Below are positions 1 through 31,092 of a stretch of 64,000 nt of DNA, in pieces (within the stretch, counting starts at the first letter, position 1; every line of letters starts with the position of its first letter). Under the pieces are notes generated by a model. The model was not told the origin of the DNA. It did no database searches and saw only the letters and a list, made by a program, of their open reading frames with translations. The translations under genes were made by a program, and so were the position numbers. Source of the DNA: Trichoplax adhaerens (Eukaryota; Animalia; Placozoa); NCBI RefSeq assembly GCF_000150275.1, contig NW_002060960.1, positions 944,469 to 1,008,468 on the forward strand. Reading direction: 5' to 3'.

Positions 1-473
1 TCTTCCAGAGGTAAAATTTAATTGAAGGAAATACTGATATAATTGATATTGCAAGTTTACATAACACGTTACTACATTAAAAATACTTTACTCTGTTTCG
101 CTGGGCAGATGGAAACTGGTGAATGGGTCTACTATGACGGTAAAAACAGCTAAACTAGTTCTTTATCCTTAATAATATACGGTAAAAGCAATACCGGTGC
201 TGAAATGAAATTGCTTTATTTAATAAAAGATTTAGGAGCATACACATCGAGTACCGCTACTAATTTTAATGGGTTCAAGAAGGCTAAGAGTAGCTATTTC
301 ATAAGTGAAGATTACTGGTACGACATATTTTTGCAAAAGCTGTAGAAAATTTGATTTCATCCTCTTTACATGCAATCATATAGAGAAAATTCAAATTAAT
401 AAATTTTTAATTTATTTTCTATTGCGATAGGAATCAGTTCAAAAAAGAACTGTCGCCCATTTTCAATGTTTAA
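1..473 (+). CDS. ODC1: ODC-like (group IV PLP decarboxylase) gene, copy 1, 3' end only
   Basis: Exons <1-10, 109-139, 230-317 and 431-473 splice to ...LPE/METGEWVYYD/DLGAYTSSTATNFNGFKKAKSSYFISEDYW/NQFKKELSPIFNV*. Contains the ODC GAY and FNGF motifs, with exon boundaries identical to copies 2-4. The symbol denotes the family, not proven orthology. Confidence 0.9.
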
Positions 474-3400
474 CGCATCGCATAACCATAACCTAAATTG
501 TAGTAGAAACCGTAATCGCTATCTAGAGCACAGACTGTGCCTTGTTTGATATTTAGCAACATAATATCACTTTTTTAGGTTACATTAGCACCTACTTTAG
601 TTCAATAATTTTAGTTTACGTGGTCTTGATAATCAAAAGGAGTCAGTGAAAGAAACTGAAATTCGAAAATCAACGTATAACATTAGTTTCCAATACTGAA
701 TCTACTACCAATCTTGAACATTGGAAGAATTTTCCAATCCCAAACCCATTTGATGCTACTCTCGTAATTAAATTTTTACCCTGTCTGAACTAAAAATAAA
801 AATTTCAAACAATCTATTTACTTTTATTTTTGTGTATTTATCACCGAAGTATGCAGCGTAATCATACAGCATAGAGAATTGTCGCAGTCAGCCCCAATTA
901 TGTATAAATGTACTTTGATGACCACTTTTCAGTATTGCGGCGTAATGCATGAGTTATAAAAATTGGAATGATCGATCAATGATTTGCTTACTAAGTAATA
1001 TTTAAGGCTAAGATATCCAACTCTTATTATAAACTAGCATACACAGACCTTTTTAAATATTGTAATAAAAGCAGATTTTTATTTTAAGTTTGTAGGCCTA
1101 ACTTTATTGTGGCGTAGTAAACTTATACAGAATAAGATATAGTTTGCCGTATTACAGTATTAAAATCATAATCGCCATTTAGAATATAGATTGTGCCTCA
1201 TTTGATATTTGGCCATACAATTTTTTTTCATCGGTTATACTAGTACCAGATAATGTTAGGGTTAGGGTTAAGCTTAGTAACTTTATTTGCCTGTTTTTGA
1301 TAATTAAACGCAGTTCGTGAAAGGAATCTAAATTCGAAATCGACTTATAATATCAATTACTGACACTTTCAACTACTGCAAATGTTGAATCTTTTAATAG
1401 ATTTTGTAAATCTCAAGACAACTTTTATTCTTCATTCGTATATTAAATCCTTGCTCCGTTTCAAAGTTATCAGAAATAGTGATATTATCTTAGTAGACTA
1501 TGAACTAACAATAAAAATTATGATATTGGAAATTTGTTTATGTTAGTGCTTTATATTTAGTACCATAGTGTGCAGTGTAATAGCAGACCAGAGGGAATTG
1601 AAACATTAAGTCTCAATTATATATGCGTGCACGTTGACAACTTTGTTTCAGTAATGTGTTGTAGTAAATAACTTAAAAATTTGGACTATTCAATATATGA
1701 TTTGCTTATCACGTAATATTTGGCGAAAGTTATTACTTGCATGGACCGTGGTGTAACAGCATTACATTTTCATTTATAAATAGGGCTAATGTGGTAAATC
1801 TTCAGTTGGTTTCAATTGGTGAGAAAGATCAAAATTCATTAACCCAATTTTAGTAGGGTATGCAGTATGTTGGAAATCTGAATTTCCAATATAGATTCCC
1901 ATAGCTTTGAAATCAAAGTAATAGCTATACAGGGTGTTTACTACAGTCTTTGTATTGACTAGCGGAATATTTATGGCATTGATAAATAGAAATTATAATA
2001 CACTAAATGCGATTACGGTGCAAAAAAATGTATGGAAATGATTGCTTGTAAAAATAATCTATGTCCGTTTATCCGGTTTATCTTAGTCGTTTTCGACAGA
2101 TTATATGAGAGGTGAAAATTGAATTCACTCTCACGGACAGAAGGAATAATAAACGTAATTTTAAAACTACTCTCTCGGTTGTAACGGTTTATTGCATATC
2201 ATATGGATTTGATCAACTTAAATAACTCAGATTAAGAGTTAGAGGTCGAGAACCGATAGTAATAGTAAGAGATTATTACTAGGTCATTACAACCCTACTT
2301 AACCTATGCTATAATATTCCTTACGCTACTTAATACTTAATATGGCTCCTGCAAGTGAAAGACCCCTAACTAAGTATGATTGTCATAACTTACTCGAAGC
2401 CAATCATACCTAATTTACTGAGATTTGCTGATACCACTTACCGAAGCACCCTGTAGTCTCGCTTAATATTACGACTAATATATCTAACATCATTTACTAA
2501 CCATATGCGATGATTATAACACTTAATAGGGTGATTCTAACTCCGCTGGTCTACCATCTTATTTATTGCTATTATGGCCTTACTATAACCGAGTTTCCTA
2601 CATAGATTACCAGTATTTTTTAGCAATAAGGCAATACATTGCATTGCGAAATAATTATTAAAATCAAATACAATATTAAACAATTTATCTGTAACAGAAC
2701 TACTTTAAATTCGATCTTTAAGTAACTGCAATTGCTTCTGGTATACTAGTTTGCATGTAAACAGCGTAGAATAATACTGTAAAAGCCATCTTACTTTCTT
2801 TCGAATTTTCTTGATTGCCTTAAAGCAGGTTATTACTGGAAGATTTCTATGAACTACTGTTTGGCAACACAATATTATTACTCATGCCACAGCATCACTC
2901 TTCTTTACAGTTAACATTGTATCCAAGTAGGATTTAATTCCTTCACTTCAGCCTGCAGTTTTCTGTGCTTCGTCACAAATTTCGCTCTCAGTAAATTCAA
3001 CAACTTCCGATTATAATCCCAGTGATTCAGTATTTCTATCGGATGATACTAAGTATTCTAAAGGAAACCATAATAAGACTCGTAATTTTATCGTCAAATT
3101 GCTCCGAATCAACGACAGCTGTTTTTTAAATTTATTATTTAAAGACAACAGGCGATTATACTATTTCATAGAGACAAATATTATTAGAGCGAGAAAAATA
3201 TGTGATGACACCATTTAATCCTTTTTCTGCTGTGGACTAGATGAAAAGGATATAAAATGAAATTTGAACTTATTAGAACGTCAAAGTATGTTGATCCAAT
3301 ATGAATTTTGATATCGATAAAAGAAAAATGCATTGAATTTGACGCTAAATTTATTAATAATTCATGCAAATGCATATTTAATAAAGGTTGTGTCACGAAA

Positions 3401-3722
3401 AGTGCCCTACTGAAAGAGTAATTACTACTAAGCCAAGTAATTTTAAACTTTATGATAAGAGTAACGATGATGATTCACGCTTAATTTAATTAAAGCTATA
3501 GAATTGTGTTTTATCAAACTTCTTTGCATTGGATTTATTCACCCAATTGGTATAGAATTTGTAAGTATTCGCTTTTCTTCTTTTCTCTCCAATACGTAAT
3601 ACTTTTCAATATTTTATTTAGTGATATTAAAAGAGTTATAACAATAATTACTGTAATTGAAAAATCCGTACCTAATGCATGTTCGCGTAAATCGCATTGA
3701 AGGATCTAGTAAACTCAGCAAT

Positions 3723-6700
3723 ATGGCGTGCCCTCATCAGGTATCAATAGATGTTATTCGATCGAAATCTCTGCAAGAAATAATAACAGAAAAAACGAAT
3801 GCAGCTAATATAGAGGTCAGCTTATCACAAAACTTTACATATAGATTTGAACTGGGTCAGTATTTGAGCATTAAATTCTCAAATATATGCAGGTTTTTTG
3901 ATTAATTTCAAGCCTACTTTGCACTTTTATGGTTTTAAGATAATGGCTCCATTTTGAAGTTTTTTCTTATTAATGTATTGCATTTTAATTAAAGAATGAG
4001 GACGATCCATTCTATTTAGTGGATATCAGCGATGTCATAAACAAGTATAAAACTGTAAGTAATGATACTCAAATGCGCTCTTAATATCTATATTTGAGAT
4101 TTACATTGCAATATCCTACTTTATATCTTTTAAATGTTATAACTGCCTAATTTAACACTTAATAATAAGTATCATTCTGTTTAAAGTACTTATTAATATA
4201 TTGGTTCCAAACCGTATCATGCTATACCACATTAAGTGCAAAAGTATTTTACTAGCGAATATTTTTAGATTCTAATGAAATACAGAGCATAAAAAATATA
4301 TTAGACTCTACCGATCATCAAAATCTTTTTGTAACTCCTGCATTTAAACTTGAAAGAGAATTTGCAATAAGCTCATATTGTTTAGCCAATTTGTATCAAC
4401 TTAAGAAATTGCCCAAACTAAGATATTATCTATTAAATTGGCCTTATTTGGTCTTAGCATTAAGCGTTTCCTTTATATCATTTCTCGTAGCTAAATAGTG
4501 GTATCTGCACACTATTTCTTCAATGAGTCACGCCAATTATTGTATTTTTCTCATTATGATGAAATAAATTTTCTGATCATACTTCATTTTCTTACTGTCT
4601 CCATTGAAAAAAAGTGGATTTCCATGATACCACGTGTTAAGCCATTTTACGGTACATTTCCACTATCAAATATATTGCAACTTTAAAATTTGCTGCAGCT
4701 ATTTTTCAAAGTTTTCTTTATTACTCACATTTTCCTTACAGCAATGAAATCAAATCCAGATTTTCAGATAGCAGCTACATTATGTGGTTTAGGTACTGGT
4801 TTGGATGTTGCAAGTGCTGTAAGTTGTACTTATAATCTTCTATATTCAAAATATAGTTTCAGTTTAAATCATTGAAAATATTGAAAATAGGGAGAAATTG
4901 AAACCGCTGTAGCAGTAGGTCTCAAAGATGAGGATGTTATATACTCTAATACTTGCAAAGGAATTTCTCATTTAAAGTAAGTAAAAGATTAATTGCTTTC
5001 ATTTTGGTACAGAAATATGCTAGCTAAATGTACGTTGTTATCGATGTGATGGTGTTTGGTCAGAATTCTTTTCATTATTCTATTCTAGACTTGAAATTTA
5101 GAGTAGTACGACATTTAGTACAGTTAAATTTTTAAATTTGTAACAAAGATAAGTCTATTGATTTGTTTAAATTGAAATTATTAGGGTAGCTGCTAAAGAG
5201 AATTTAACGCAGATGACATTTGACAGTGAAGTCGAACTGCATAGAATTAAACGTTTATATCCTAGTGCCAGGTATATATTTTAAATATGATTGGATAAGT
5301 AAATGTGATGTTAATGTTTTTAACTCTTATAAAAATAACTTTGAGGATATTTAATAAACATATGTAGACTAGTATTACGCTTACTTGTGGATGATTCCCA
5401 TTCTGAGCTTAAGGTAGAGCTTTCAATATATTGTTATATCGACTCTCCTTTCGCCTTATTTAACTTGTTGTTACTACTTCATGTGTTTCCTAGCTTGGAG
5501 TAAAAGCTGGAGCTTCTTTCAGTAGAGTGCCGCATCTATTGAAAGTTGCTAAAGAATTAGGTTTAAATGTGATAGGAACAAGGTAAGTGATTATTCTAAT
5601 ACATGAATCGGCGATAAAGTTCTATGTAGTAGATTAACACAAACATTTGCGTTAGTTTTCATAATTCGGAAGATACAGTAAGCGCATAACTATCATTATC
5701 TATTTCGTAATCCAATATTAACCTAAAATTTAATTCGAGTTAATACATTTTTACGGCTTTAACGCTTCATAATAGTTTCCACGTTGGTTCTGAATGCGGT
5801 AGCCCTGATGCTTATGCCAAGGCAATAGAAAAAAGCAGAAGGGTTTTTGATATCGCGGTTTGTTTAAAAATTATCCTATAATGTTGCTCAATTGTTATAA
5901 TTTTGGTTGAGTATGGAGGCTTATTTACATTTATGCAATAGAAAGGGCTCGGTATGAAATTTAATCTGTTAGATATCGGTGGTGGATATCCGGGGCAAAT
6001 AAACGAATTGTTCACAAATGTAAGTCATCGTTATCTCCCAAGGTATATAACAACCTTTTGCTAACTATGACAGCCAAACTGCTATACTTTTAGATATCTC
6101 GTATTATAAATAAAGCATTAGACATCCATTTTCCTTCAGATAGTGGAGTCCGAATAATTTCTGAACCAGGTAATTCTCTGTGGCTATCTTATGAACGTTT
6201 AAAGTCAATTTAATTTCTATTAAATATCCAGTTCGTTCACTGCAAGACAAAAATACTATGAATATATTAATATATATTTACATTAAAATTGAACACAAGG
6301 CCAATACTTCTCTTGTTCTTCATCAATTCTGGTGGCAAATATTATCAGTAAGCGCATAAGATTTGAGGATGACGACACCCAAATTGAAGGTACGAGAGCT
6401 AAAATTTAGTACTGCATATTAGCAATAAGATGAGAGTCAAATTGTTGCCCCTTTTGCATCAATTTATATAATTTATTAGTTAATACATGAAAACTGATAG
6501 TATTTCAAATTTAAATTTTTTATTGCTAGGCTATCCAAGTGATAAGGAAAATATGGTGATGATTGTGTTTAAATTTTGTAACCTTTTCAATTGATTCTAC
6601 TTTAATCATTGAATGCTGTTATTTTTATAGGAAATAACGTATCATATTAATGAAGGTGTAATAGGCGCATTCATTAGTAAATTGATTATAAATTTGCTGT

Positions 6701-7273
6701 ATATTCCGAAAAAATTGATAAAAAGCAACGAAAAATGCTATCGCAGTAGTATGTGGGGCCCAACATGCACTCCAGTAGATCAAATTTTAAGCGATTATAA
6801 TCTACCTGAGGTATATCTTCATTTTTGAAGAAATGCAATATTAGAAACTTTAAATTTCCTAAGCCCGCAATTAATATATACTTTTTTTCCATTTCGATGG
6901 ACAGATGGAAGTTGGCGAATGGGTCTATTATGAAAGTGAGTGCATTTATTATTTCTTAAAATGTATAAGATAATTCTATCGTAAACAGAAAATCGTATAA
7001 CGAAGCTATTTTATTGCAAGATCTGGGGGCATATTCATCCGGTTTAGCCACAGATTTTAATGGATTCAAATGCAAAAAAAAATATTATTTTATAAATGAA
7101 AAAGATTGGTATGATACATTTATTGCAATACCCTCTTGTATGTGAAACTGTTATTTTTGAAATTCACTCCTCAGCAGAAATGCAGTTGCTTAACCGATAA
7201 TAATAACGCAATTTGCTCTAATTTCGATAGGGATCAATACAAGAAAGAATTATCTCCTTATTTCAAAAATTAA
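3723..7273 (+). CDS. ODC1: ODC-like decarboxylase, copy 2 (17 coding exons, ~422 aa)
   Basis: Exons 3723-3815, 3995-4054, 4615-4651, 4742-4818, 4891-4976, 5185-5271, 5368-5413, 5494-5582, 5776-5857, 5942-6019, 6094-6169, 6300-6389, 6530-6555, 6631-6810, 6905-6935, 7021-7108, 7231-7273 give one open frame. Motifs: PFYAMKSN (PLP Lys), MTFDS, SFHVGS, DIGGGYPG, SEPGQYF, WGPTCTPVD, GAY, FNGF. Family-level symbol. Confidence 0.93.
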
Positions 7274-7598
7274 CAAATTGCAGTATATGATCATCAGCTG
7301 AGCAGTACTAGTACAAAACCCATAGATTTAAGAGCACACGTATACATTATTGAATACCCTGTAAGATTTATAATTTTAAGCCTTAAATATTTCTGCAGTC
7401 GAGCTTTAGTCGACCAATTTTAGAAATTAAGATTAAAAATTAACAAATTGCAGTATATGATCATCCGCCGAGCAGTACTAATACAAAACCCATAGATTTA
7501 AAAGCACATGGATACATTATTGAATACTCTGTAAGATTTATGATTTAAAGCCTTAAATATTTCTGCAGTCGAGCTTTAGTCGACCAATTTTAGAAATT
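7265..7598. repeat. 170-bp tandem duplication beginning at the stop codon of ODC-like copy 2
   Basis: 7265-7434 and 7435-7598 are near-identical (aaaaattaacaaattgcagtatatgatcatc...gtcgagctttagtcgaccaattttagaaatt). Confidence 0.95.
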
Positions 7599-8440
7599 TG
7601 ATAATTTCGTGTATAAGTAATCTCTTTTCTTCATACATACAGTTTTTAAATGTGTAACACGATCAGAAAATGTTTGTTGAATTCATGTTTAATATTTAAA
7701 TTAACTGCTGATACTAAAACTATTACGTTATTCATCAAGGATAAAGTGAAGTTATGCTGAAGATCAGAGTTCATTTCTATTATGATCCTACTACTTTTTC
7801 GTTATTTCAAAGTATGATTAGTAATCATAACAGGACTTCAATGCACTTTAATTTGCTCCTAATAAAATTTGCATTATTCGCGTGAGTTTTAGAAAATTGC
7901 TCTGAACCACTGAAAGGTATTAGCCATTAAAATCCTAAGATAATGTTAAATGTGCACATACATTATAAGGTTTGCCATTGCTAGATAAAGTAGAAATTAC
8001 TAACTTAATGGCGAATAAATATGCAGCATTAATACTCTAATGCTATTACTAAGCTCTACATAGCTATAGGGTTGGCTAAATATTTCATTTGAAAGCAATT
8101 GGCATTAGTACTACTACATTGCATTCATCTATTTACTACCCAAAATTTGTTATTCTAAGGTTTGTTTAATTTATATTGGCCAACTGACTAAATTACACTA
8201 AATAAAATTACGCAGCGTGTGATTGCTAGGTCTGCCGGGATAAATAGAGTTTCTGGATACTGTGCTTAACCACTAGTATTTATTTTGATGCTTCCTACTA
8301 CAGTCTTGACCTATCAATATCTAAATTTATTTTTATATTCTGTTATCATAGATTTTTTGAAACAAAGTACAGTACTAAACCAAATAATATAGATTGAACA
8401 CTCAATGGTGCTGTAGCAATAACTTTAAACAGTTTAACGT

Positions 8441-9865
8441 ACTAGCTTAACGTCTGATCACTTTGCTGACAGAGATACCGTAGCCTATTCCATTCTTTTA
8501 ATCCATAAAAACCAGAATAGGTTAACGCTCGAATTCGCTTTAACTTACTCGTTTAACGTCCTGTTACTTCGCTGATAGAGATGCTACAGTTTTATCCATT
8601 ATTTCAATCCATAAAGAGAGAGTATGCTTATATCGCACAGTAATTAACTAGCTTAACGTATTGCCACTTGGCTGACAGAGATACTAAAGTCTTTTCCATG
8701 CATAAAAAGAGAGTAGGCTTAAAACTTAATACTACTCAGTAATCAGTTAGCTTAACGTTTTGCCACTTCCCTGGCAGAGATAGATACTATAGTCTTTTCC
8801 GTTATTTCAATCCATAAAGAGAGAGTATGCTTATGTTGCACAGTAATCAACTAGCTTAACGTCTTACCACTTCGCTGATAGAGATACTACAATTTTTTCC
8901 ACTATTTCAATCCATGAAACGAGAGTAGACTTAAACTTAGTACTGCTCAGTCATAAACTAGCTTTAACGTACTAACTTAACGTCTTATTACTTCGCTGAT
9001 AGAGATCCTACAGTCTTTTCCATCATTTCAATCCATAAAGAGAGTGCTGACTTATATTTAATAGTTAATATTTAATATTGCTCTGTAATCAACTAGCTTA
9101 ACGTTTTGCCACTTCGCTGACAGAGATACTAAAGTCTTTTCCATGCATAAAAAGAGAGTAGGCTTAAAACTTATTACTACTCAGTAATCAGTTAGCTTAA
9201 CGTTTTGCCACTTCCCTGGCAGAGATAGGTACTATAGTCTTTTCCGTTATTTCAATCCATAAAGAGAGAGTATGCTTATGTTGCACAGTAATCAACTAGC
9301 TTAACGTCTTGCCACATCGCTGACAGAGATGTTAACGTCCTTTCAATCACTAAAAAGAGAGTAAGCTTAAGCTTAACACTGTTCAGTAATCAGCTAGCTT
9401 AATGGCGTGCCACTTTACTGGCAGAGATAGATACTACAGACTTTTCCATTATTTTAATCCATCAAAAGAGTATAGGCTTACACTTAATATTGCACAGTAC
9501 TCAACTAGCTTAACGTCTGCACTCGTCGCTGTCAGAAATACTACCGTTTTTTCCATCATTTCTGTGCATAAAACGGAAGTAACTTACGCTTAATATTGCA
9601 CAGTAATCAACTAGCTTAGCGTCTTGCCATTTCGCTGTCAGAAATACTACCGTCTTTTCCATTATTTCCAAGCATAAAACGAGAGTAGGCTTAAGCTTAA
9701 GACTGCTTAGTAATCAACTAATTGAACGTCTTGCCATTTCGCTGGCAGAAATACTACCGTTTTTGCTATCCTTTGCATGCATAAAACGAGAGAAGGCTTA
9801 AGTTGAACACTGCTTAGTAATCAACTGGCTTAACGTCTTGCTACAAATCAATAAAGAGAGAGTAA
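8441..9865. repeat. Minisatellite, ~13-14 diverged units of ~100-110 bp
   Basis: Recurring core aactagcttaacgtcttgccacttcgctgacagagatactacagtcttttcc...gagagtaggctta...cagtaatc, with unit starts near 8441, 8548, 8648, 8746, 8851, 8958, 9093, 9191, 9296, 9393, 9505, 9611, 9717 and 9824. Confidence 0.93.
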
Positions 9866-10596
9866 GTTGAGGCAATTGGTTTTACAATAATTCTCAACTA
9901 CTTGTTCTATTTCCTGTCTCCCTTGCTCATCCAGAGTTTAATTGCAGGAAATTTTCACCAAGGTCGTTAGTTCAATTCGCTCTTCTAGACATGAATATTC
10001 AACACCTCGTAAACTAGTGTATCATGTACTCCATTGAGCCAAATAATCTGTATGGCATTCGAGCAAAGTACAACACAGTAAAGAGCAAAGTTCAAGGTGC
10101 TCGTTGAGCATCAATTGCACTAGACTCTACGATATAGGCAAGCAATTAGCCATTTTTTTCCAGTCAAGCATTAGGAGTTTGCCTTATCCTGCTCATCATA
10201 GCCACTACAAGTACGATACTTGATGCAGCCATTTGTCATGCAAATTATCTTATTCTTCATTTCCAATGCAATTTGTGTTAGCTGATGTAATTGTTGATGA
10301 ACGTATACTTATTCAGTATGATTAATTAATTCTTCATACTATGGTGTTGTTGTTAGCTTAAGGAATAGACTTTCCGATCGATCCTTCTGAATACATTTCA
10401 AGTTGGACTGGTAGCAGTCTTCATTTTCCTTCCGTTTTGATTTGTATTTTTTGGTGCAGAAATTGTAAGTATCTACTTGTTTCTTTCCTTGTACAAAGAT
10501 ATGATCTTGCTTGTAAGCAATCTTGAAAGGGATTTTACTAAGTGTACTATAACAACATCGATCTTGTAGCGTAGAAAAACCTACAGACTCAGCAAG

Positions 10597-13500
10597 ATGG
10601 CGTGTCATCGTGCTGCGCCAATAGACATTATACAATCACAATCATTGCAAGAATTAATTCTGGAAAGAACAAACGCAGCGAAATTAAAAGTAAGTCAACT
10701 TCTCCAGCATGCACATTTCAATTTATCCTGATTTGCCACTAGAAATTCTATTCAAAGGATCATTTGCAAGTCGGTTTGTAGAATGTTCAACATTTCCACT
10801 TGGGTGATTTTACTTGAAAATGTTTCTGTTTTAATTTATATTATGGCGTTAATCAACACGTTGCAAAAAAAGAATGATGATGAACCATTTTATTTAGTGG
10901 ATATTGGCGACGTTATATACAAGTACGTAACTGTAAGTAAGCGGAATGGGATGTTTTTTTACTGTCCTTACTTAAGATTGACGTTATGCCACGGTACTAT
11001 GTCTTTCTTCACATCTTTAAAATGTTTAACTGGCTAAATCGAAGCAGCTACAATGTAAAAAGATGACCATAACTGACATTGCATTTCACTTACATTTCTT
11101 GTTCAACTCCGAAAAGTACTCTACCTTAGAACACTAAAGAGGTTTAGATACTTTTTACCAGACAAAATACAAATGGCCAAAATAATTTTAGAACAAACTC
11201 ACAGTTACAGCTATTCTAGCCTCTGTACACCACGATTAGATTTGAGCAATCTTAAATAGCAAGTTCATGTTGTTACACTGTCTAGGCTTTTTATTTTAAC
11301 TTATTGGTGCTCTATCTTTCATATCTATTATCGTACTTAGATTGAATGTTAAGTTGCTAACTTTACCTATAACTACAATGTTGTTATTGATCACTAGTAT
11401 AATTCTTTTTCTTATTTTCTGATCATGACGCTATTCTTTTTCACATCTCACGACTGAAATTAGTGGACGTCCATGATGCCTGGTATCAGGCCTTATTTTG
11501 GTATGTTTCTTCTACTAGACTTATGACAGCTGTAGTACTTACCTTTCAGGTACGACTAGCAACTGAAGGTTTATTCGATAATTAATTTTTCCCTTCAAGC
11601 TTTGAAATGCCACCCGGATTTCCAGATTATAGCCACTTTATGTAGTTTAGGTGCTGGTTTGGACGTAGCAAGTGCTGTAAGTTCTGATGTACAATAGTGA
11701 TGAACAGGCAGAACTTGAGTTATAAAAATATCATTTTGATATTAGGGAGAAATAGAAATAGCTAGAGCATTAGGTCTCCAAGATGAAGATGTAGTCTACT
11801 CCAATACTTGCAAGGGAATTTCTCATATAAGGTATGCTTGCCTAAAATTAGAGTCGTGATTACGTATCGTCTATTGCTAATCGCTGTGAATAGAATAAAC
11901 TTTTATTTCTGAAAGTATCAATGCATAAGAACACTTCATGATCTGATATAAATAACATCCATCTTTATACGGGATGATTCAATGGAATTCAAAATTGCTG
12001 ACGAATTTATTACCTCGTGTTAATTTTAATCTATTAGGGCAGCAGCTAAAGAAGGTCTGACGCAGATGTCCTTTGATAGCGAGGTAGAACTACAAAGAAT
12101 TAAGCTTACATTTCCAAATGCGAAGTAAGTAATTGAATGTGAATCCTACGAGTGGATTAGATGCCACTCTTTTCCGATGAATTAATAAATGATTTGGCTT
12201 TTACATTATGCAGACTGCTAATACGTTTGCTTGTGGATGACTCACATTCCATCCTTAAGGTATAGTAGAGCAATAAGAGAGTTTAATGAGCTCTATTTTT
12301 ACCCTATTTTTATGCATTTAATACGGTGCTATTAAAATAATAGACAGGTGCAAAAGCTGGAACTCCGTTCAGTAGAGTATCGCACCTGTTTAAGGTTGCT
12401 AAAGAATTAGGTTTAAATGTAGTCGGTACAAGGTAATCGAATGATTCACATAGCAATCACCTTAACATGTTCAACTTATAATCAGTAAAATTCGACTTTG
12501 ATATATTGCTAGCAGTAAACACGGTATGCATGTATGTTCTCCTCTTTATTAGAATTTATGCTAGAAAGAGATGGTACTGCCATTAATCAGTACTTAATAG
12601 GCTTTCTTTTTGTTCTCTATTCAATATTATTTCAAATACATCACCCATTGTTAATACTGTGGACAATTTGAACTATTCCAATAAGTTTTCACATCGGTTC
12701 CGGTTGTCATGACCCTAGTGCTTTTACGAAGGCCATAGAAAAGTCTAAAAAGGCCTTTGATATCGCGGTTAGTCCACTAGTTGTAGTGAAGTAGAACCCT
12801 TTAGCCTAACTTAACTACTTAAAATTTAATTTGATTGTTACAACAGAAAGAGCAAGGCTTGGAACTCAAGGTGCTAGATATTGGAGGTGGATTTCCTGGA
12901 CATGCAAACACATTATTCGAAAATGTCAGTCCTGATGAATTATTTCAGTAAATTCAATGCTGCTTTTAAACGTAGAGCTTTTGATTTTCAGATGTGCCAT
13001 GCTGTCAATCAAGCTATAGACATTCATTTTCCAGCAGATAGTGGAGTGAAAATAATTGCTGAGCCAGGTAATAGTCTAGATGTTGATACTGATCTCATGA
13101 AATCTGCCACATGAAATGATATCTTACAAAGCGTCAGAGATTCTAAGATGAAATATCATTAAATGACCTAGTTTGCTCATAATTTGAACATAGGCAGGTT
13201 CTTTGCCCATACTTCTTCAACTTTGGTTGCCAATATTATCGGTAAACGACTTAGATATAGTGATGACGACGTTCAGATTGAAGGTACGGTATTAAGTGCA
13301 ATGAAACAGCTTCTAAAATTCGATAAAATAACAAGAATAAGATGGGCACGCGTTACTAAATAGCCAAATAACTACACAGAGATACAAAACTGACATATAC
13401 TCCAATTTTTAATATTCATTTTAGGGCACCCTAATGATACGGAAAATATGGTGATATTTTTTTTAGTTTTAATTACCACCATGCATTAAGTTAATTTTAA

Positions 13501-14148
13501 CACTTCTTATTCATATGATATCTTTTCAGGAAATGCTATATCACATCAATGATGGCTTAATCGGCTCTTTTCTTGGAACAATATTAGCACGTCAAAAATA
13601 TCTTCCACAGCAATTGATACCTACTAAAGGAAAATCTTACCGCAGTAGTTTATGGGGACCATCATGTGGAGCAATGGATTGCCTTTTAAGTGACTGTAAT
13701 CTCCCAGAGGTATGATATATATTAATTTGTGGTTATAATGATAGCCTTTAAAGTTTACGGGCATCTTACTTGAAGTCACATATTTAATCGAGCAGATGGA
13801 AGCCGGCGAATGGGTCTACTATGAAGGTACCGTATAAATAACTTTGATCTTAAAATACCATTGCGATAATAATTAAAGAGTAAGAGAATTATTTTATTAA
13901 TAGATATGGGAGCGTATACATCGTGTTTAACCACTAATTTCAATGGATTCAAGAACACAACTAGATACTATTACATAAATGAAAAATATTGGTACGACTT
14001 GCCATTTTCATCAATGTTGTAGCTTATCTTATTTACAAATTAACTTATCAGTTTATGATTAATGAATATCTAACAGATATTTTTTTATTCCAATTGCGAT
14101 AGGAATCAATACAGGAAAGAATTATCTCCGTATTTTAGTATTGAATAA
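10597..14148 (+). CDS. ODC1: ODC-like decarboxylase, copy 3 (17 coding exons, ~423 aa)
   Basis: Exons 10597-10689, 10873-10932, 11464-11500, 11600-11676, 11746-11831, 12038-12124, 12214-12259, 12344-12432, 12686-12767, 12847-12924, 12992-13067, 13194-13283, 13425-13450, 13530-13709, 13796-13826, 13904-13991, 14103-14148. Motifs: PYFALKCH, SFHIGSGC, DIGGGFPG, AEPGRFF, WGPSCGAMD, GAY, FNGF. Family-level symbol. Confidence 0.93.
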
Positions 14149-17100
14149 TGAGATAAATAATCAACTGCTGGTTTGTTGTAGTGTGGGGTTCGATGTTTAA
14201 AATAACGATACTTCTTTTATATGATGTTAGTTTATATGGCAGGATAATAATAATTCAGATTTGCTTTTCCATTCTATAAAATGTTCTTTCAAAATTCGGT
14301 CATAGGATCTTAAACTTATTATTTAATCATATCAAAATAAAAAATTCTACTGTTGGTCATAAGATCATGATGTGAGCAAGTATGATTGCTGCACTTTGCT
14401 TCACTCTATCTGCAAATTAGCTTTACGGCTACGGTGCTCTGACAGATTATGTTCAAATACGACTTCAGATTACCGTGAAACAAGACAATATTAATCCTAA
14501 TTAAAGTCGCTCACAACTGCTATTCTGATTCAAGTGCCAACTAACTTGCTTACTTACCAATTAACTCCTTAATAACTAGGTGAAAATTTTCTGATAATAC
14601 CAATTTAAGCATTGATCAATATGGCGTTGAGCTACATAATTTTACGGCTGCATGATTCGTTCGTAGACTGGGTGATATGTAACAAGAACTGATGCATCCA
14701 ATTATAATTATTTTACTTTGTTGACTAATATGAAACTGTTACAACGACTATTATATATACGTATTAACCATGCCGCAATTTTACACACTAATTGTTATAC
14801 TTTACGGAGTAGAAAGGTTACAATGATTGCAAATTTCAGGAAAAAAGTTCGAAATTAGTATTATTGAATATCGTACTAAATGTAGCTTATTCAATAAGCA
14901 ACGCTATGCAGACACAGATCCTTTAAGAATTTCTCTACCTCTTTCAGGCACAGCTTTGCAAGTTGCAATGGTGCTCTTACAGTTTTATGTGACAACTTTA
15001 TTGCCATTCGTCACGGACTACTTCCTGACAAGTACAATTCTAACGTAAAGCATTTACATTAAGTTGCTTCTACAGATTCTACCCTAACCTGTCGAAAGAT
15101 CTAGTAAGAATAAAGTGCTGATACTATAACGCCTAAGAACTACACTTCTAAAAGGCTCGCAACCAATAGACACACTGTACTATAATCTACAAAATAGCTT
15201 TATACTATAATACTGAAATACTCTCTGCAACAATACCATCTAAACTCTATAATTTAGGCAACGTAGTGCCGCAATACCGTTTTAAAGTGACTTTCTAAAG
15301 TCTAGACACATTTAATAAGACACCAGGAATTAAGATTAAGACATTACTAGCAAAGGCTAGCTCAGATTACTCGGTGAGCATTTTAATAAATTTTCATGCC
15401 TTTGCAAGGAAAATGCGGCCAAGGTTCTGACTATAATGAGTGCACTCGAAAAACTTGCATTATGCAAATGTTAAATGAAGAAAAATCTCCTACTTATATA
15501 TTTTTATTGAACATAATTGTTTTACGTGCGAAAGATGCACGTAAGAACTGAACCAATTTAATTAGATGGCAGTGTGAGATTCTTACTGCCAGAGCAAACT
15601 AAACTATTAATCTCGATAAATCTACCGTCATGACGTACAATGGAATAGAAATAACGCAAACATACGAGTATATTAATTAAAAATGCGTTTTGCTACATAT
15701 TTAGAATATAGCTCCTACGTATTAGGGCAATGGTTTTACAAATTGCAGGTTACTTTATCTCTGTCTTAAATGAACTAGCTTTCAATGCTTGTAGCAAATC
15801 TTTGTCGAAACCTTGATAAATTTCAGGTACGTTGCTTTGAATTCAGGTTTAACCAAAAGTACAGCTAGTGAATAATATCAGTAAAATTGATATATGATAT
15901 GATACACGAAACAGTATATGGCATTTTAATTTCACCATTAATCTATCAATTTGCTAATTTCTGGTATTATACTGTAAGATCAGTGAAAGTGATCACGGTT
16001 TTATATACATGATAATTAATTCTATTGCAAAAGGATGCTTAAAAGTTCAATCGTACTTGAAATTAATCTATTGAATCTAATTTATTGCAGTAGAAGTTAG
16101 TATAAAGTAAATCTAGTTAACGTTCGTAAAAATTTTAATTCATTTCAACTGGTGGTCATGCAATAAAATAAAGTGTTAAAAAAATTCATTCATTCTTTTT
16201 AAAGATAGTAATGTGTGATGATGGTATATTTAAGCCAGAGAGATTAAACTTAAAATATTTTCATTTAAATCCAATTAGATTTATTTTAAATTAAATTTAT
16301 GCACCATATGGCACAATATAGTGCTTTTTAATACTGTCTGCTTCAATCAGTTACAACTAGTCTGCTACCAGCTAATTCTCCTTTATTACCTAATTGATTC
16401 AATAAAATTTCAATAACGTCAACATTTAGAGGATATATGTCCTGTAAGGACTAAAAATTGCGGCTTAAAGTCTACGATAGCCTGTATGTTAATTTAGTTA
16501 GCTGTTGTAGTGCAGCCCCTAATAAGTTTAAGAATAAGATGATTGCAATTAGATAGTCTAGAGATAGTCCTTATTAGTAGTTAGATGAACCTAACTTATG
16601 CATCAAAGGGAAGTTTATAAGGAACTGTAGTTCTTGCTTCAATTTTAAGAAGACACTTTATCACAGCAGTTTATCATATATTATCCCTATAGTTCTTAAT
16701 GCTATTTCTAGACCGATTTGACCTTGTTATCGTTGCCTTCTTGTGACAGATTTTGTTCATTAGAGATTACTGTAGGCACTATAACTGTTGTCGTCGCAAA
16801 TAAATAAGAAGGTAAATAAGCATCAATTATCTTCGAATCGAGGTAGTTATCTTTACTGTACAGTAGGTATCTGTACTTCTCTCGAATTAAAACAACTTTG
16901 TACTTTTACAGATTCAGGCGCCTAACGAGATTAACCGAAAACCTCTTTATACTTCTGAATGATCTTCTCGTTATATGATGTTGTAGCCCTGAATTATTAC
17001 TGAATCTACTCACTGTAAATACTTGTATGCTAGGTAACAGAAAGACAAATTTAACTATGGGCTGCTATTATGCAGGACCATGGTACTACTCAACGAAAAT

Positions 17101-17763
17101 TTTATCATGATCTAAATACCTTGATTGGCCTCCTTTCACCTATTATTTTTGATTGTGCTATCCAAACTATTGCTCATAATTAATAAATGTTCATACAGGA
17201 ACATAATACTGCTCGAAGCATATGTTGGCTTTGATCTAAAAGCCTTGATTAGATTCTTTTCACTTACTGTCATTGATCATGCAATCTAAACATTCTGGTA
17301 ATAATTGGTATTCATATATCATACATTGACAGAAATACAAATGGAAATGTAAGCTTTATGTTTTCTATAACCGGCTAAAATGTATACATTTTGTTCCCTA
17401 TGATTACATAAACACAGAAAAATGTAATCATATTAACTTGTTTTCTTAATTTTAAGCTAAATTAATTGGTAATAGAAATGTTAGCTCTTAGCGAGCAGTT
17501 CTTTGCTTCCACGACTGGATTATTTTAATTACATTAACGGAGGTATGTTCAATTTAAGTGTGGTAAAGATTTTGCTCTCGAATTTTTCAGTCTATAGACT
17601 TGTTTTAAAATCTCAGTTGGTGGTAAGATTGAAAGTAATTTGCTGTAATTCACGATAGGTATACAATTTTTACTAAATTCTATACCTAAAAATAGGCTTA
17701 CTAACGCAACAGTTCTTGACAAGAATATTCAGATGGTTTGTTAAATTAAGTCTATATCCAAGA

Positions 17764-20700
17764 ATGGCTTCCCATCATGTTGTACCATTAGAAGTCACCG
17801 AGTCGCAGTCTTTACAAGAAATCATTACTCAAAAAGCGAATGCAGTAAACTTAAATGTAAGTTTGATTTTTTATTGGATATTATTGGCCAAATGTCCGAA
17901 TCTATCATTACTTCCTTGATTGCTGCATTATTTTACTTTGCTCGCTGATTCAAGCCATAAGCTACTATTGCTTAAATATGGAAATTTATATATAATTTTT
18001 TTTGTTTTACCGAATGTCAAAGAATGAAGATGAAGCATTTTATTTGGTGAATATTGGTGATATTATATACAAGTTTAACACTGTAAGCAAGCTGTAGCTA
18101 ATATAAAAGACTTAATAAATAATATCGTTACCTAGAAAATATCAGACCTATATCAAATTTACCACTTTCTCGATTTATAGATGCAATGAATAGGTTTTAT
18201 AACTCCTTAGGCTCGCTATCCATTAACTTGAAATTTGAGATTAAAATTGAGCAAACCTCTAGTCTCACACAACTTGTGTTACTGTTATTACTAAAATTAA
18301 CTAAAATTACTACTGTAGATTACCATGCAATCAATCATCGTTGAATTAACGATAGAATATGTAGCAATGAAAATAAACCAACGTAAATTGACGAAGAAGT
18401 GTTCTCGTTTAATCGTAAAACTATCTTAAAATTATCGACAGTAGTAAGTTTGATAAGTTTACCTAACTTTCCTATGTAAAAGAAATATTTACTATCTCTA
18501 TCTCCTTAAGACACCAGTCTTATAACCCCTTATTTCTAGTCTCTGTTAATCTGCCTAAATGCTATTTGAATATCATTTTGGTAGCGATAGAATTTTAAAA
18601 TAATATGATATTCTGATATTTCTTTTTGCTTATAATAAAATTAGTGGTTGTCCGCACTACCTCGTGTAAAGCCCTTTTACGGTAATTTCATGCTAGCGTT
18701 TGTTACAGTAGATGTAGAGTCGAGTTTAAATAAAAAGAAGCTTTCTAATATTTTATGTAATTTCGTCCTTAAGCTATACAATGCAATCCAGACTTTCATC
18801 TAGTAGCAGCTTTATGTAGTCTAGGTGCCAGTTTCAGCGTCACAAGTGCTGTAAGTGATAGAAGTCTAAGAGAAGTGTTTAAATCCTTTAGCGGCATTAA
18901 ATCAAATTTAATGTTATTGAGATAGGCTGATATACGGTTAACGACTGCGTTGGATGTCAAAAATGACAATATCATCTATTCAAATCCGTGCAAAGGATTG
19001 TCTCATTTAAAGTAAGTGGGACAGAGTATTCTCGATCATTTTAATGATGAAATACCAAGCTAATTCCTTCATAAACTGTTAAGATTGTAACGATGTTTTA
19101 TCTAATATTTAGTTCAAACTATAGAGTTCAGGTATTAAAAGTTAAAGATTTTTCTATGCAAAATCTGATGACGAATATTCACCATGACTTATTGAGAAGC
19201 CAGTTTTGTTGCAGCGTTTTTGATTTTGGATACTTCATATTTAGGGTGGCTCTGAAAAAAGGAATAACTCTGATGACTTTCGATAGCGAAGGAGAACTAC
19301 AGCGAATAAAGCGTATGGTTCCACATGCAAAGTAAATAGTAGGGTTTAATTTTGAAATGATACTCATATTGGATAGATCGACAATTTTTTGAAATTATTG
19401 ACTGGAATAGATTGCTGTTACGACTGAAAGTTGATGATTCTAAAGCGGCTTTTCCGGTATGTACGGTCAAAAAAATTTGAAATAAACTTTCATTTTTCTC
19501 TGCTTAGATTTCATGATACAAACTAATCTACGTCCACTTTAGTTAGGGGCGAAGTATGGAGTACCATTCTCTAGAGTGTTGCACTTATTTAAAGTTGCTA
19601 GAAAATTAAGTTTAAATGTAATAGGAATAAGGTAAGAAAACTAGTAATTAACCATAATTTATTACTTGAAGTTGGACCGACGATGATTAGTTTGTTCTTA
19701 TTTAAAATAATAAAAAAATATACTTGACAAATATGGTAAATAAATTTAAAATACAGGAATAAGTCCTTGTGTTAAAAGATAATTATGCTGATTTAGTTTC
19801 CATGTTGGTTCTGGCTGTGATGACCCCGATTCTTTTACTAAAGCTATTGAAAAGTCCAAAAAAGCGTTCAATCTAGCAGTTAGCTTCCGAGTTGCTTTTT
19901 AAGATTATATATAGTAAGACTGAATTAAAATAACGACTTTTTAATGCGAGTCGCAATATTTAATTACTTTAACAGAAAGAGATTGGCTTGGATCTCACAT
20001 TACTAGATATCGGTGGCGGATATCCGGGGATTGAAGATACGTTATTTGAAAATGTAAAAAGAGATTTACTTATTCCACGATTAATTATACTTATTTGTAT
20101 GTCGGATTTGATGGCCAAAGCACTTTATTTTCAGGTTTGTGGAGCCATTACTGAAGCACTTGACAAATATTTTCCTACAGAATGTGGAGTTGAGATAATA
20201 GCAGAGCCAGGTAGAACCTTTTTGACTAAGGATAAATGTTACATAAAATTTGGCCGTCCTTATCACGGCAATGGATTAAAAGTCTAGATGAATCTTAGTC
20301 TATGATCGATGCTAAAGGTTTAACGTTATTACTTGTATTTTGGTGGCTAGGAAAATATTTTACTACCTCTTCAATGATTTTAGTCACGAATGTCATTGGT
20401 AAACGTCTGAGATACGATGATAATGTGAAAACTGAACGTATGTAATCTATTAATAGAAAGACCATTTTTTCTGATACTATGCTTTCGATAGAGTCATTAT
20501 GATCATTTAATATTGATGTAAAACTTGAACTCTAATAATACCAGAAAAAATTAAAAAATTGCTTTTCATCGTAATTGATAATTTCAGAGAATCAATCCCA
20601 TAAGGAAAGCATGGTTAGGGCATATTATTTGCATTACATTTTCGAAAATACTGGTTTCATTCTTTTTGTTTGCATGATTACTTTTATAGGAATGCATGTA

Positions 20701-21333
20701 TCATATTAATGATGGCTTGCATGGATCTTTCCTTCGAAGATTATTCACAAAAGAGCCATTCATACCTAATGTACTGAAATCGAAAAGTGGTCAATTCCAT
20801 CGTAGCAGCATATGGGGGCCTACATGTAATGGACTGGATTGTATTGCAAGTGGCCAAACTATTCCAGAGGTATACCATAGTATAGATTTTACATTTTAAT
20901 GCAGAATGCTAAGGTTTACTTACAATAAATATGAATGAACGCGGTAATACTTTATTTGATTAGATGGAAGCTGGTGATTGGACTTACTTTGAAAGTGAGT
21001 ATATAGGTGATCTCGAAAGTACTTGAATTTATACATTTGATGAAACTGTTCTTGTTTATAAGATCTAGGAGCATATGCATCAGCTGCGTCCTCCAATTTT
21101 AACGGATTTGCAAGTAAAGAAAGGCATTATTACATAAGCAAAGAACATTGGTGAGCCAAATTTGTTCTTGGACTATTTGCGCTAGTAACTGTATGATTCA
21201 ATTCGCTCCTACTTTTAAAGCTAGATTAATTTTACCAATCAATAATTTATTCCAATTTAATAGGAGTATGACTAATAAAGAAGTCAAGCAAGAGTTATCT
21301 CGATATTTTGATATTCATTTTAATACACAATAG
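17764..21333 (+). CDS. ODC-like pseudoenzyme / antizyme-inhibitor-like protein, copy 4 (17 coding exons, ~430 aa)
   Basis: Exons 17764-17856, 18023-18082, 18645-18681, 18774-18850, 18926-19011, 19245-19331, 19411-19456, 19543-19631, 19797-19878, 19976-20053, 20135-20210, 20351-20437, 20588-20613, 20690-20869, 20964-20994, 21063-21150, 21264-21333 form an intact frame. Motifs: PFYAIQCN (PLP Lys->Gln), FSVTS (for FDCAS), SFHVGSGC, DIGGGYPG, AEPGKYF, WGPTCNGLD. Confidence 0.92.
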
Positions 21334-30902: not shown

Positions 30903-31092
30903 GTTGCTCTCACAGATTATAACGCTAATATGTAGTAGCATCTTGTAAAAGTATCTTACTACTATGATACCCAGGTCATTTTTTCTGTAAGGCTTGAAAT
31001 TGAATATTTAATTTGCAAAATAGTCTTTGAAGACTTCATTCTGTGATCTTACTATCGGATATTCTTCCTAAATCAACTGCTTATGCTAATAA
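30903..31092. repeat. Dispersed duplicated non-coding segment (homologous to 23870-24060)
   Basis: Same blocks as at 23870-24060, in the same orientation. Confidence 0.75.

What the first reader, a model, noticed from the sequence alone, without database searches (positions are those of the whole stretch)
1..21333. Tandem ODC-fold array whose members have all lost the ornithine-binding acids: candidate new amine-producing decarboxylases
Seen: at least four head-to-tail copies about 7 kb apart with identical exon phases. In all three complete copies the specificity helix (human ODC NDGVYGSFNCILYD, Y323/D332) is rewritten as NEGVIGAFISKLII, NDGLIGSFLGTILA and NDGLHGSFLRRLFT. The WGPTCD motif (C360-D361) becomes CT, CG and CN. 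Established: D332 and D361 bind the delta-amino group of ornithine, and an ODC paralog in mouse (Gm853) was reported to be a leucine decarboxylase. Inference: copies 2 and 3, which keep the PLP Lys, H197, E274, C360 and Y389 equivalents, have hydrophobic pockets. They probably decarboxylate neutral or hydrophobic amino acids to monoamines rather than making putrescine, each with a different preference, giving a lineage-specific small-amine signalling or defence chemistry.
Basis: partly seen in the sequence, partly recalled or inferred. Interest (0 to 1): 0.82.

Follow-up and report, generated by a model that had tools for sequence, protein, structure and literature searches.

The report
Tandem re-pocketed ODC paralogs, Trichoplax
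Four neighbouring copies of the ornithine decarboxylase gene in the simple animal Trichoplax are intact and kept by selection. Three keep the full catalytic machinery but have lost every residue that holds ornithine, so they probably decarboxylate something else, and the fourth is a conserved dead copy; none has been tested at the bench.

Summary
The window lies in Trichoplax adhaerens. It carries a head-to-tail array of four annotated but uncharacterised ODC-fold genes: TRIADDRAFT_31473, 60902, 31500 and 60904. They sit 6.9-7.2 kb apart and share one 15-exon structure and the same exon phases.

- **Integrity:** all four have open reading frames with canonical splice sites.
- **Pocket residues:** all four lack D332, D361, Y323, N327 and Y331.
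- **Catalytic residues:** three copies keep 17 of 18 other critical ODC residues, including K69, H197, E274, C360 and Y389. The fourth has K69Q, D88S and E94D, so it is a conserved pseudoenzyme.
- **Canonical ODC:** a canonical ODC exists on another scaffold.
- **Origin:** the array is a placozoan-specific clade derived from that ODC. At least three orthologues occur in a second, divergent placozoan-like read set. The clade is unrelated to the vertebrate leucine decarboxylase clade.
- **Selection:** pairwise dN/dS is about 0.2, and only exons remain alignable between copies.

"Not ornithine decarboxylases" is well supported. "Active decarboxylases of neutral amino acids" is the best-supported reading but is untested. 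An antizyme-inhibitor-like or heterodimer-regulator role is the main rival, and it is the default in the literature. The scan has noted similar ODC paralogues elsewhere in this genome.

The parts
1..345 (+). Contains the last 10 nt of exon 13, exon 14 (109-139) and exon 15 (230-345, stop included). The rest of the gene lies upstream of the window, at window -3154 to 0 (= L018 4315-7469).
   Evidence: P0001 maps exactly onto the DNA. The full open 413/414-aa model has AG/GT at every junction. Residues: K69 kept (AMKCN), D332T, D361T, Y323G, R277K.
3723..7145 (+). The homology-guided model has 16 exons (15 conserved plus a 26-nt micro-exon at 6530-6555) and encodes 420 aa.
   Evidence: The frame is open and all internal junctions are AG/GT. 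The JGI model replaces exons 3, 4 and 15 with non-homologous choices, although the conserved exons are intact.
4742..4818 (+). c1 exon 4, carrying the PLP-lysine motif AMKSN (K69 kept, C70S) and GLDVAS (D88 kept).
6631..6810 (+). c1 exon 13: specificity helix NEGVIGAFISKLII (Y323I, N327I, Y331I, D332I) and WGPTCT (C360 kept, D361T).
10597..14022 (+). 15 exons, 411 aa. This is the cleanest candidate enzyme: all 18 non-substrate critical residues are kept, including R277.
   Evidence: The AF2 model of P0151 has pLDDT 94.4. The best structural match is human ODC 2oo0, with TM 0.94 and rmsd 1.7-1.9 A.
11600..11676 (+). c2 exon 4: ALKCH (K69 kept) and GLDVAS (D88 kept).
13530..13709 (+). c2 exon 13: NDGLIGSFLGTILA (Y323I, N327L, C328G, Y331L, D332A) and WGPSCG (C360 kept, D361G).
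17764..21154 (+). 16 exons, 408 aa, intact but lacking the PLP lysine. An alternative last exon would extend the gene to 21333.
   Evidence: The frame is open and all junctions are AG/GT. It is also intact in H2, with 3 synonymous and 3 non-synonymous differences.
18774..18850 (+). c3 exon 4: AIQCN (K69Q, codon CAA) and SFSVTS (G86S, D88S, A90T). The deposited models skip this exon, but it has canonical AG/GT sites and the conserved phase.
20690..20869 (+). c3 exon 13: NDGLHGSFLRRLFT (Y323H, C328R, Y331F, D332T) and WGPTCN (C360 kept, D361N).

Best explanation
The array is a placozoan-specific subfamily of ornithine decarboxylase paralogues. It arose by duplication of the animal's own ODC and was later amplified in tandem.

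**Copies c0-c2.** These fold as ODC and are expected to form the usual head-to-tail dimer. They keep the PLP-binding and proton-transfer machinery: K69 Schiff base, D88, E94, R154, H197, S200, G235-237, E274, C360, Y389 and F397. They have replaced every residue that holds the distal ammonium of ornithine (D332, D361, Y323, Y331, N327) with small or hydrophobic residues, and the replacements differ in each copy.
- Shown: they are not ornithine decarboxylases in the canonical sense, and they are under purifying selection.
- Inferred: they are PLP-dependent alpha-decarboxylases of amino acids with uncharged side chains and make monoamines. c2 is the most likely active one, because c0 and c1 carry R277K and R277Q.

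**Copy c3.** This copy has specifically lost the barrel-domain half of the site (K69Q, G86S, D88S, E94D). It keeps the half that a subunit donates to its partner (C360, F397, N398), and it evolves no faster than the others.
- Inferred: it is a conserved pseudoenzyme that acts through dimerisation, either as a regulatory partner or as a half-site donor.
For: **Identity and fold**
- The genome and genes are identified.
- Pfam domains hit.

**Intactness**
- All four frames are open, with AG/GT junctions and conserved phases.

**Residues**
- Of 106 positions invariant in 7 canonical ODCs, each copy keeps 77-79%.
- The changes unique to c3 cluster at K69, G86, D88, A90 and E94.
- Within c0, c1, c2 and L022, 17 of 18 non-substrate critical residues are invariant, against 45% of other columns (Fisher p = 3e-5). 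By contrast, 0 of 6 pocket positions are invariant.

**Selection**
- Pairwise dN/dS is 0.17-0.26.
- DNA similarity between copies survives only in exons.
- Between T. adhaerens and strain H2, exon divergence is 0.3-0.5% against 0.78% in introns.

**Conservation elsewhere**
- At least 3 orthologous paralogues occur in Logan assemblies SRR30664515-17. They have the same exon boundaries, K69 kept, D332 changed to T/T/I and D361 changed to A/S/A.

**Phylogeny**
- The window clade has 100/100 support.
- It is nested with the canonical Trichoplax ODC (96/95).
- The c3 branch is 0.29, against 0.40-0.47 root-to-tip for c0-c2.

**Other context**
- A canonical ODC with every residue lies on C1408.
- An ODC paralogue acting on a neutral substrate has a precedent in Gm853, a leucine decarboxylase (PMC6313458, PMC7671201).
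- The roles of D332 and D361 are described in PMC5518511 and PMC3543441.
Against: - No activity, PLP binding or transcript evidence was obtained.
- The critical residues are also largely kept in AZIN2, which is inactive (turtle AZIN2 differs only at R154 and E274). Conservation of the set therefore does not prove catalysis.
- R277, the PLP-phosphate ligand, is K in c0 and Q in c1 and L020.
- Variable pocket residues could mean relaxed constraint rather than diversified specificity.
- dS is near saturation (1.0-1.7), so the dN/dS values are rough.
- H1/H2 counts are tiny: 2 synonymous/2 non-synonymous for c2 and 3/3 for c3.
- The antizyme-binding segment resembles that of the genome's own ODC, so antizyme binding is not excluded.
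- Gm853 does not use the D332/D361 route.
- The organism behind SRR30664515-17 is not named in my data.
Confidence: 0.5

Rival explanations
1. All four are catalytically inactive regulatory ODC homologues. They would act as antizyme inhibitors that sequester antizyme, or as subunits that heterodimerise with the true ODC and modulate it. This is the 'recurrent emergence of inactive ODC homologues' scenario.
For: - By the 18/20-residue criterion, loss of D332 and D361 classes them as non-ODC. Ivanov et al. 2010 proposed such paralogues act as AZIN-like proteins or heterodimer inhibitors (summarised in PMC5574924 and PMC5518511).
- c3 certainly lacks the PLP lysine.
- AZIN2 keeps most critical residues yet is inactive.
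- The dimer-contact residues K169, D134 and D364 are kept, and K294 is R.
- The 117-140 segment is similar to that of the genome's ODC.
- A supplement of PMC10580291 lists 'ornithine decarboxylase inhibitor activity' as gained at the placozoan-cnidarian-bilaterian node. This hints that an antizyme is present.
Against: - 17 of 18 catalytic and PLP residues are frozen in c0-c2 and L022, while the rest of the protein is 45% invariant.
- Where constraint was lifted, in c3, exactly these residues changed.
- A regulator has no need for four-plus paralogues with different pocket linings.
- The clade is not related to vertebrate AZINs.
- An exon-wise search for the antizyme family found nothing, but that search is uninformative.
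Confidence: 0.3
2. They are still low-efficiency ornithine, lysine or other diamine-forming decarboxylases that bind the distal amine differently, as Entamoeba histolytica ODC does.
For: E. histolytica ODC has Y323H, Y331F, D332E and D361N and still decarboxylates ornithine, though weakly (PMC3543441). c3 shows the similar pattern H, F, T, N.
Against: - EhODC keeps one acid (Glu at position 332). The Trichoplax copies have no acidic residue at either position in any of seven clade members.
- The copy most like EhODC (c3) lacks K69.
- A canonical ODC is present in the genome.
Confidence: 0.08
3. The copies are decaying duplicates (pseudogenes or neutral drift), and the motif changes are noise.
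For: - The deposited gene models for 60902 and 60904 skip or replace exons.
- H1/H2 differences are half non-synonymous.
Against: - No stop or frameshift occurs in about 1.2 kb of coding sequence in any copy, and every splice site is canonical.
- Introns and spacers are diverged beyond alignment while exons stay 67-83% identical.
- dN/dS is about 0.2.
- Orthologues are kept in a divergent placozoan-like data set.
- The AF2 model has pLDDT 94.
Confidence: 0.03

Closest known systems
Eukaryotic ornithine decarboxylase (human ODC1, PDB 2OO0/1D7K; Trichoplax's own ODC on scaffold C1408)
   Same: - Same two-domain fold: TM 0.94 and 39% identity to human ODC, with Pfam PF02784 and PF00278.
- Same exon structure as the Trichoplax ODC.
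- Same PLP and catalytic residues in c0-c2.
- Same clade as the Trichoplax ODC.
   Different: - D332, D361, Y323, Y331 and N327 are all replaced.
- Clade signatures are YH(I)N(D/E)G in place of YYVNDG, KAG in place of KFG, and F87L, C89V and P113T.
- There is a long stem branch of 0.47-0.53.
- c3 lacks K69 and D88.
Mouse leucine decarboxylase (Gm853/Ldc, P0308) and its vertebrate 'AZIN2-like' clade
   Same: Both are ODC paralogues with an intact catalytic set that do not use ornithine. This shows the fold can accept a neutral side chain (PMC6313458, PMC7671201).
   Different: - It is an independent vertebrate clade with 99/99 support.
- Gm853 keeps D332, D361 and Y323, and changes N327R, C328L and Y331R.
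- Some fish members of that clade (P0363, P0379) have, like the Trichoplax genes, lost both acids.
Antizyme inhibitors AZIN1/2 and the 'catalytically inactive ODC homologues' of Ivanov, Firth and Atkins 2010
   Same: Both are lineage-specific ODC duplicates with substitutions in the key residue set. c3, as a dead copy, fits this class in principle.
   Different: - They are not orthologous to AZINs.
- c0-c2 lose only the substrate-holding residues and keep PLP ligands that AZIN1-type proteins lose.
- Antizyme binding was not tested.
Entamoeba histolytica ODC (PDB 4AIB)
   Same: It also carries substitutions at Y323, Y331, D332 and D361 (H, F, E, N) with K69 and C360 kept (PMC3543441).
   Different: It keeps an acidic residue at 332 and retains weak ODC activity. 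The Trichoplax copies have no acid at either site.
Dead-paralogue partners in polyamine enzymes (trypanosomatid deoxyhypusine synthase/AdoMetDC 'prozymes')
   Same: c3 is a conserved, catalytically dead paralogue encoded beside live-looking paralogues of an obligate dimer with shared active sites. The paradigm is described in PMC3663545.
   Different: No interaction or activation has been shown here. The resemblance is a lead only.

Membership tests
Fold-type III (group IV) PLP decarboxylases, ODC/DAPDC/ADC superfamily | An N-terminal TIM-barrel PLP-binding domain (PF02784) plus a C-terminal beta-sheet domain (PF00278) | tested here: met
   Exon-wise Pfam hits are above the cut-offs. Both domains are precomputed for P0001, P0151, P0152 and P0153. 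The AF2 model matches human ODC at TM 0.94.
Functional ornithine decarboxylase (EC 4.1.1.17) | Complete set of critical residues, including the substrate ligands D332 and D361 (with Y323 and Y331) | tested here: not met
   D332 is T/I/A/T, D361 is T/T/G/N, Y323 is G/I/I/H and Y331 is A/I/L/F in c0-c3. The defining residues are listed in PMC5518511 and PMC3543441.
Functional ornithine decarboxylase (EC 4.1.1.17) | PLP Schiff-base lysine K69 and catalytic C360, H197 and E274 | tested here: met
   All are kept in c0, c1 and c2. The feature is not met in c3 (K69Q, D88S).
Functional ornithine decarboxylase (EC 4.1.1.17) | Decarboxylation of L-ornithine to putrescine | not testable with these tools
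   An enzyme assay is needed.
Antizyme inhibitor (AZIN1/AZIN2) | Orthology with the vertebrate AZIN clade | tested here: not met
   The window clade is nested with the Trichoplax ODC (96/95). AZIN2 sits in a separate vertebrate clade (99/99).
Antizyme inhibitor (AZIN1/AZIN2) | Binds antizyme, has no catalysis, and has lost PLP binding | tested here: inconclusive
   PLP ligands are kept in c0-c2 and lost in c3. The antizyme-binding segment is similar to that of the genome's ODC. The antizyme family search of the genome was blank but uninformative.
Leucine decarboxylase (mouse Gm853/Ldc) | Membership of the vertebrate Ldc clade and its pocket pattern (R327, L328, R331, with D332 and D361 kept) | tested here: not met
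   Tree; residues.
Diaminopimelate decarboxylase (LysA) | Score above the TIGR01048 equivalog cut-off | tested here: not met
   P0151 scores 127.7 bits and P0153 scores 89.6 bits against a cut-off of 297.9. The genome's intronless lysA-like ORF scores 368 bits.

The most novel reading that the evidence does not exclude
The array encodes a combinatorial heterodimer system. The dead copy c3 keeps the half-site that a subunit donates to its partner (C360, F397, N398, plus its own H323, R328 and N361 pocket residues). It would pair with the K69-bearing copies c0-c2, so hybrid active sites with several different pockets would make a palette of aliphatic or aromatic trace amines. These amines could feed the recently described placozoan amine GPCRs independently of the single AADC.
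Probability: 0.1. Interest if true: 0.8.

Novelty: new variant of a known kind. Interest (0 to 1): 0.5.

Why it matters
Placozoans have no neurons, yet they respond to small molecules. A 2025 preprint (10.1101/2025.04.18.649542) reports Trichoplax GPCRs for tryptamine, phenethylamine and tyramine and attributes their synthesis to a single AADC. It does not mention ODC or ODC-like genes.

If some of this ODC-derived family make monoamines from neutral amino acids, the repertoire of possible transmitters in an early-branching animal would be larger than assumed. This genome has at least 12 ODC-like loci, and only one is canonical. It would also be a second, independent case, after mouse leucine decarboxylase, of ODC being re-tooled for a neutral substrate.

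The family offers natural pocket variants on one scaffold for studying specificity in fold-type III decarboxylases. If the genes turn out to be regulators instead, they are one more instance of the known recurrent birth of ODC-like regulators.

Tried and rejected
**Searches that gave little**
- Word search with a single exon found no candidates. It is uninformative because of the length and word limits.
It delivered the deposited models and the Logan exon ORFs P0003-5.
- The exon-wise antizyme family search (PF02100) of the genome was blank and rang in no control, so it is no evidence of absence.
- Literature searches for the four locus tags and for Trichoplax plus ODC found nothing on these genes. 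The main texts of PMC10580291 and PMC12013895 have no mention of them, and the held supplements gave only a GO line. Ivanov et al. 2010 is not held, so I could not check whether Trichoplax was in their survey.

**Analyses with limited power**
- dN/dS between T. adhaerens and strain H2 rests on only 4 and 6 substitutions.
- The careful PMSF tree did not finish in two runs. I report the quick PMSF tree and a finished LG+G4 tree with bootstraps.

**Readings considered and rejected**
- DAPDC, ADC or carboxynorspermidine decarboxylase membership (trees).
- Bacterial contamination: the genes are intron-rich and lie on a 1.23-Mb scaffold.
- Recent duplication or gene conversion: introns are unalignable.

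- No joined spliced model was handed to any search or fold tool. Database and fold steps used exon references or the deposited proteins P0001, P0151, P0152 and P0153.
- My homology-guided joined CDSs were used only inside scripts, for translation, alignment, trees and dN/dS.
- No human contig was met.
Full report
**What and where.** The window is scaffold C1397:944469-1008468 of a 105.6-Mb, 1414-contig, roughly 31% GC assembly. Protein hits name it as Trichoplax adhaerens. The finding covers four annotated but uncharacterised genes on the + strand:
Only its last exons lie in the window, at 1-345.
- TRIADDRAFT_60902 (P0152; c1, copy 2; 3723-7145).
- TRIADDRAFT_31500 (P0151; c2, copy 3; 10597-14022).
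- TRIADDRAFT_60904 (P0153; c3, copy 4; 17764-21154, or to 21333 with an alternative last exon).

**Observation.** The deposited proteins map onto the DNA without a mismatch. Start-to-start spacing is 6877, 6874 and 7167 bp. All copies share one structure of 15 exons, and c1 and c3 have an extra 26-nt micro-exon in a variable loop. Exon lengths and phases are identical, including 37, 77, 86, 87, 46, 89, 180 and 31 nt. The same boundaries are found in the genome's canonical ODC and in a homologue from another data set.

The JGI models are imperfect:
- Models 60902 and 60904 skip or replace the exons that carry the PLP-lysine motif.
- Model 60904 retains an 81-nt in-frame intron.
- Models 31473 and 31500 lack exon 1.

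In every case the conserved exon is present with AG/GT sites in the right phase. With those exons, all four reading frames are open, at 413/414, 420, 411 and 408 aa. HMMER aligns them column for column with human ODC 315-376. Pfam PF02784 and PF00278 hit the exons.

**Residues.** I aligned the four models with frog ODC1, whose numbering is the same as human up to residue 294 and one higher from 316 on. I also included AZIN2, mouse Gm853 and canonical ODCs.
- c0, c1 and c2 keep K69, D88, E94, R154, K169, G171, H197, S200, G235-237, E274, C360, D364, G387, Y389, F397 and N398.
- R277 is K in c0, Q in c1 and R in c2.
- All four copies lack Y323 (G/I/I/H), N327 (L/I/L/L), Y331 (A/I/L/F), D332 (T/I/A/T) and D361 (T/T/G/N).
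- c3 additionally has K69Q (codon CAA), G86S, D88S, A90T and E94D. Its unique losses among 106 ODC-invariant positions cluster almost entirely in the barrel-domain half of the active site.
- Mouse Gm853 (P0308, named 'Gene model 853') keeps Y323, D332 and D361, and differs at N327R, C328L and Y331R.

**A canonical ODC exists.** Exon-wise searches of the whole genome find at least 12 ODC-fold loci. Only the one on C1408 (L004) carries YVNDGVYGSFNCLLYD and WGPTCDG together with every critical residue. The other loci differ:
- C1414a and b have C360V, D361S and D332S.
- C1397:113xxxx a and b have D361S, with or without D332K.
- The C1413/C1373/C1362 group has FGQTCD.

**Phylogeny.** A finished LG+G4 tree with ultrafast bootstrap and SH-aLRT agrees with a quick LG+C20 PMSF tree.
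- c0-c3, together with two homologues from Logan assemblies, form a clade with 100/100 support on a long stem (0.47-0.53).
- This clade groups with the C1414 and C1397:113 paralogues and the canonical Trichoplax ODC (96/95). The family therefore arose from ODC within the placozoan lineage.
- c3 is sister to all the others. c0-c2 group together (95/79), apart from the Logan pair (100/99).
- The vertebrate ODC, AZIN2 and Gm853 sequences form a separate clade (99/99). Any neutral-substrate activity would be convergent with leucine decarboxylase.

**Relatives elsewhere.** The profile search with the four exon-13 translations returned three exon-sized ORFs, P0003-5. They carry MYHINDG and WGPTC(A/S) motifs and come from runs SRR30664515-17. 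Their contigs (L020-L022) carry the same exons with the same AG/GT boundaries. K69 is kept in L022 (LAVKCN). D332 is T, T or I, and D361 is A, S or A. Its position inside the placozoan clade and its 50-67% exon identity indicate a divergent placozoan. No c3-type orthologue was found there, but the search could easily have missed one.

**Selection.**
- Pairwise dN/dS among the four copies is 0.17-0.26 by NG86, LWL85 and most ML estimates, with dS of 1.0-1.7, so the ratio is rough.
- DNA similarity between copies is confined to exons (67-83%). Introns and the 3.5-kb spacers no longer align.
- Against strain H2 (L019, about 99% identical), both c2 and c3 are intact. Exon divergence is 0.3-0.5% against 0.78% in introns, but there are only 2 synonymous/2 non-synonymous and 3/3 changes.
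- c3's amino-acid branch (0.29) is shorter than the root-to-tip paths of c0-c2 (0.40-0.47). It keeps 78% of ODC-invariant positions, like the others. It is therefore a maintained protein and not a decaying one.
- Within c0, c1, c2 and L022, 17 of 18 non-substrate critical residues are invariant and identical to ODC, against 45% of the remaining columns (Fisher p = 3e-5). None of the six pocket positions is invariant (p = 0.04).

**Structure.** AlphaFold2 on P0151 with a 94-sequence alignment gives pLDDT 94.4 and pTM 0.92. Foldseek's best matches are human ODC chains (2oo0: TM 0.94, rmsd 1.7-1.9 A, 39% identity). These are followed by T. brucei ODC and the chlorella-virus arginine decarboxylase.

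**Interpretation.** The literature lists D332 and D361 as the substrate ligands, and Y323, Y331, D332, C360 and D361 as the ornithine-contacting residues (PMC5518511, PMC3543441). Losing both acids and both tyrosines makes canonical ornithine binding very unlikely. E. histolytica ODC still works weakly with H, F, E and N at these positions, but it keeps one acid (PMC3543441).

The pattern is a frozen catalytic set with a variable, uncharged pocket. The catalytic set has decayed only in the one copy that lost the lysine. This is what one expects of active PLP decarboxylases that have changed and diversified their substrate, with c3 as a dimer partner. It is not proof, for three reasons:
- AZIN2 also keeps most of the set.
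- R277 is altered in c0 and c1.
- The standard reading of such paralogues is an inactive regulator (Ivanov et al. 2010, as summarised in PMC5574924).

From my own knowledge, not tested here: K69, D88, E94, H197, E274 and D332 come from one subunit of the ODC dimer, and Y323, C360, D361 and F397 come from the other. This is why c3 could still donate a half-site to a partner.

Double loss of D332 and D361 with K69 and C360 kept also occurs in a few fish ODC-like proteins (P0363, P0379). The theme therefore recurs in animals.

**Verdict.** These are known, annotated genes of unknown function and a new variant within the known phenomenon of re-specified or inactivated ODC paralogues. The scan has already flagged other ODC-like genes of this genome on other scaffolds.

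**Method notes.** No joined spliced sequence was given to any search or fold tool. Exon references and deposited protein ids were used instead. No human contig was encountered.

Noticed in passing
L001 2845-4056 (-) = G000:C1405:1987844-1989055: An intronless 403-aa ORF scores 368 bits against the lysA (diaminopimelate decarboxylase) equivalog TIGR01048, above the 297.9 cut-off. It lies on a 2.47-Mb scaffold, and its GC (36-37%) matches its flanks. It is a bacterial-type gene in an animal assembly, either by horizontal transfer or as a symbiont insert.
   Followed up: partly
L002 (G000:C701, whole 2247-bp contig): The contig carries a bacterial-looking aspartokinase ORF (323 aa) followed by the start of a DAPDC domain. 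It is probably a symbiont or contaminant contig.
   Followed up: no
window 8566-9841 and 7265-7598: The spacer between copies c1 and c2 holds a minisatellite of about 106-bp units (about 11 copies, 63-78% matches) and a 170-bp unit repeated twice (94% matches). This coincides with a local GC rise to 35%.
   Followed up: partly
window 4615-4818, 18645-18850, 20054-20134, 21150-21333: The deposited models are mis-spliced. Models 60902 and 60904 omit the exons with the PLP-lysine motif, and model 60904 and its H2 counterpart retain an 81-nt intron with good GTAAAA...TTTTCAG sites. The H2 model also splices over the TGA stop (donor TG|GTGAGC) to a 22-codon last exon ending at 21333.
   Followed up: partly
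L004-L017 (C1408, C1414 x2, C1397:1126000-1146000, C1413, C1373, C1362, C1278, C829, C1397:1195000-1205000): The genome has at least 12 ODC-fold loci with the same exon structure, and only C1408 is canonical. C1414a and b have C360V. C1373 and C1362 carry tandem, partly fragmentary copies with FGQTCD, and the two scaffolds look like duplicates of one another.
   Followed up: partly
window 25319-38187: Downstream of the array lie genes for secreted or membrane proteins. One has a signal peptide and a Cys-rich N-terminus at 25319, and a Ser/Pro/Asn-rich repeat ORF lies at 29662-30252. The H2 annotation calls a 530-aa product with no Pfam hit here. There is no obvious functional link to the decarboxylases.
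   Followed up: no
proteins P0363, P0281 (Acipenser) and P0379 (Clarias); P0201 (Hydra): The fish 'ODC-like' proteins also lack acidic residues at both 332 and 361 while keeping K69 and C360. A Hydra 'AZIN2-like' protein has D332A with D361 kept. Re-pocketed ODC paralogues therefore recur across animals.
   Followed up: partly
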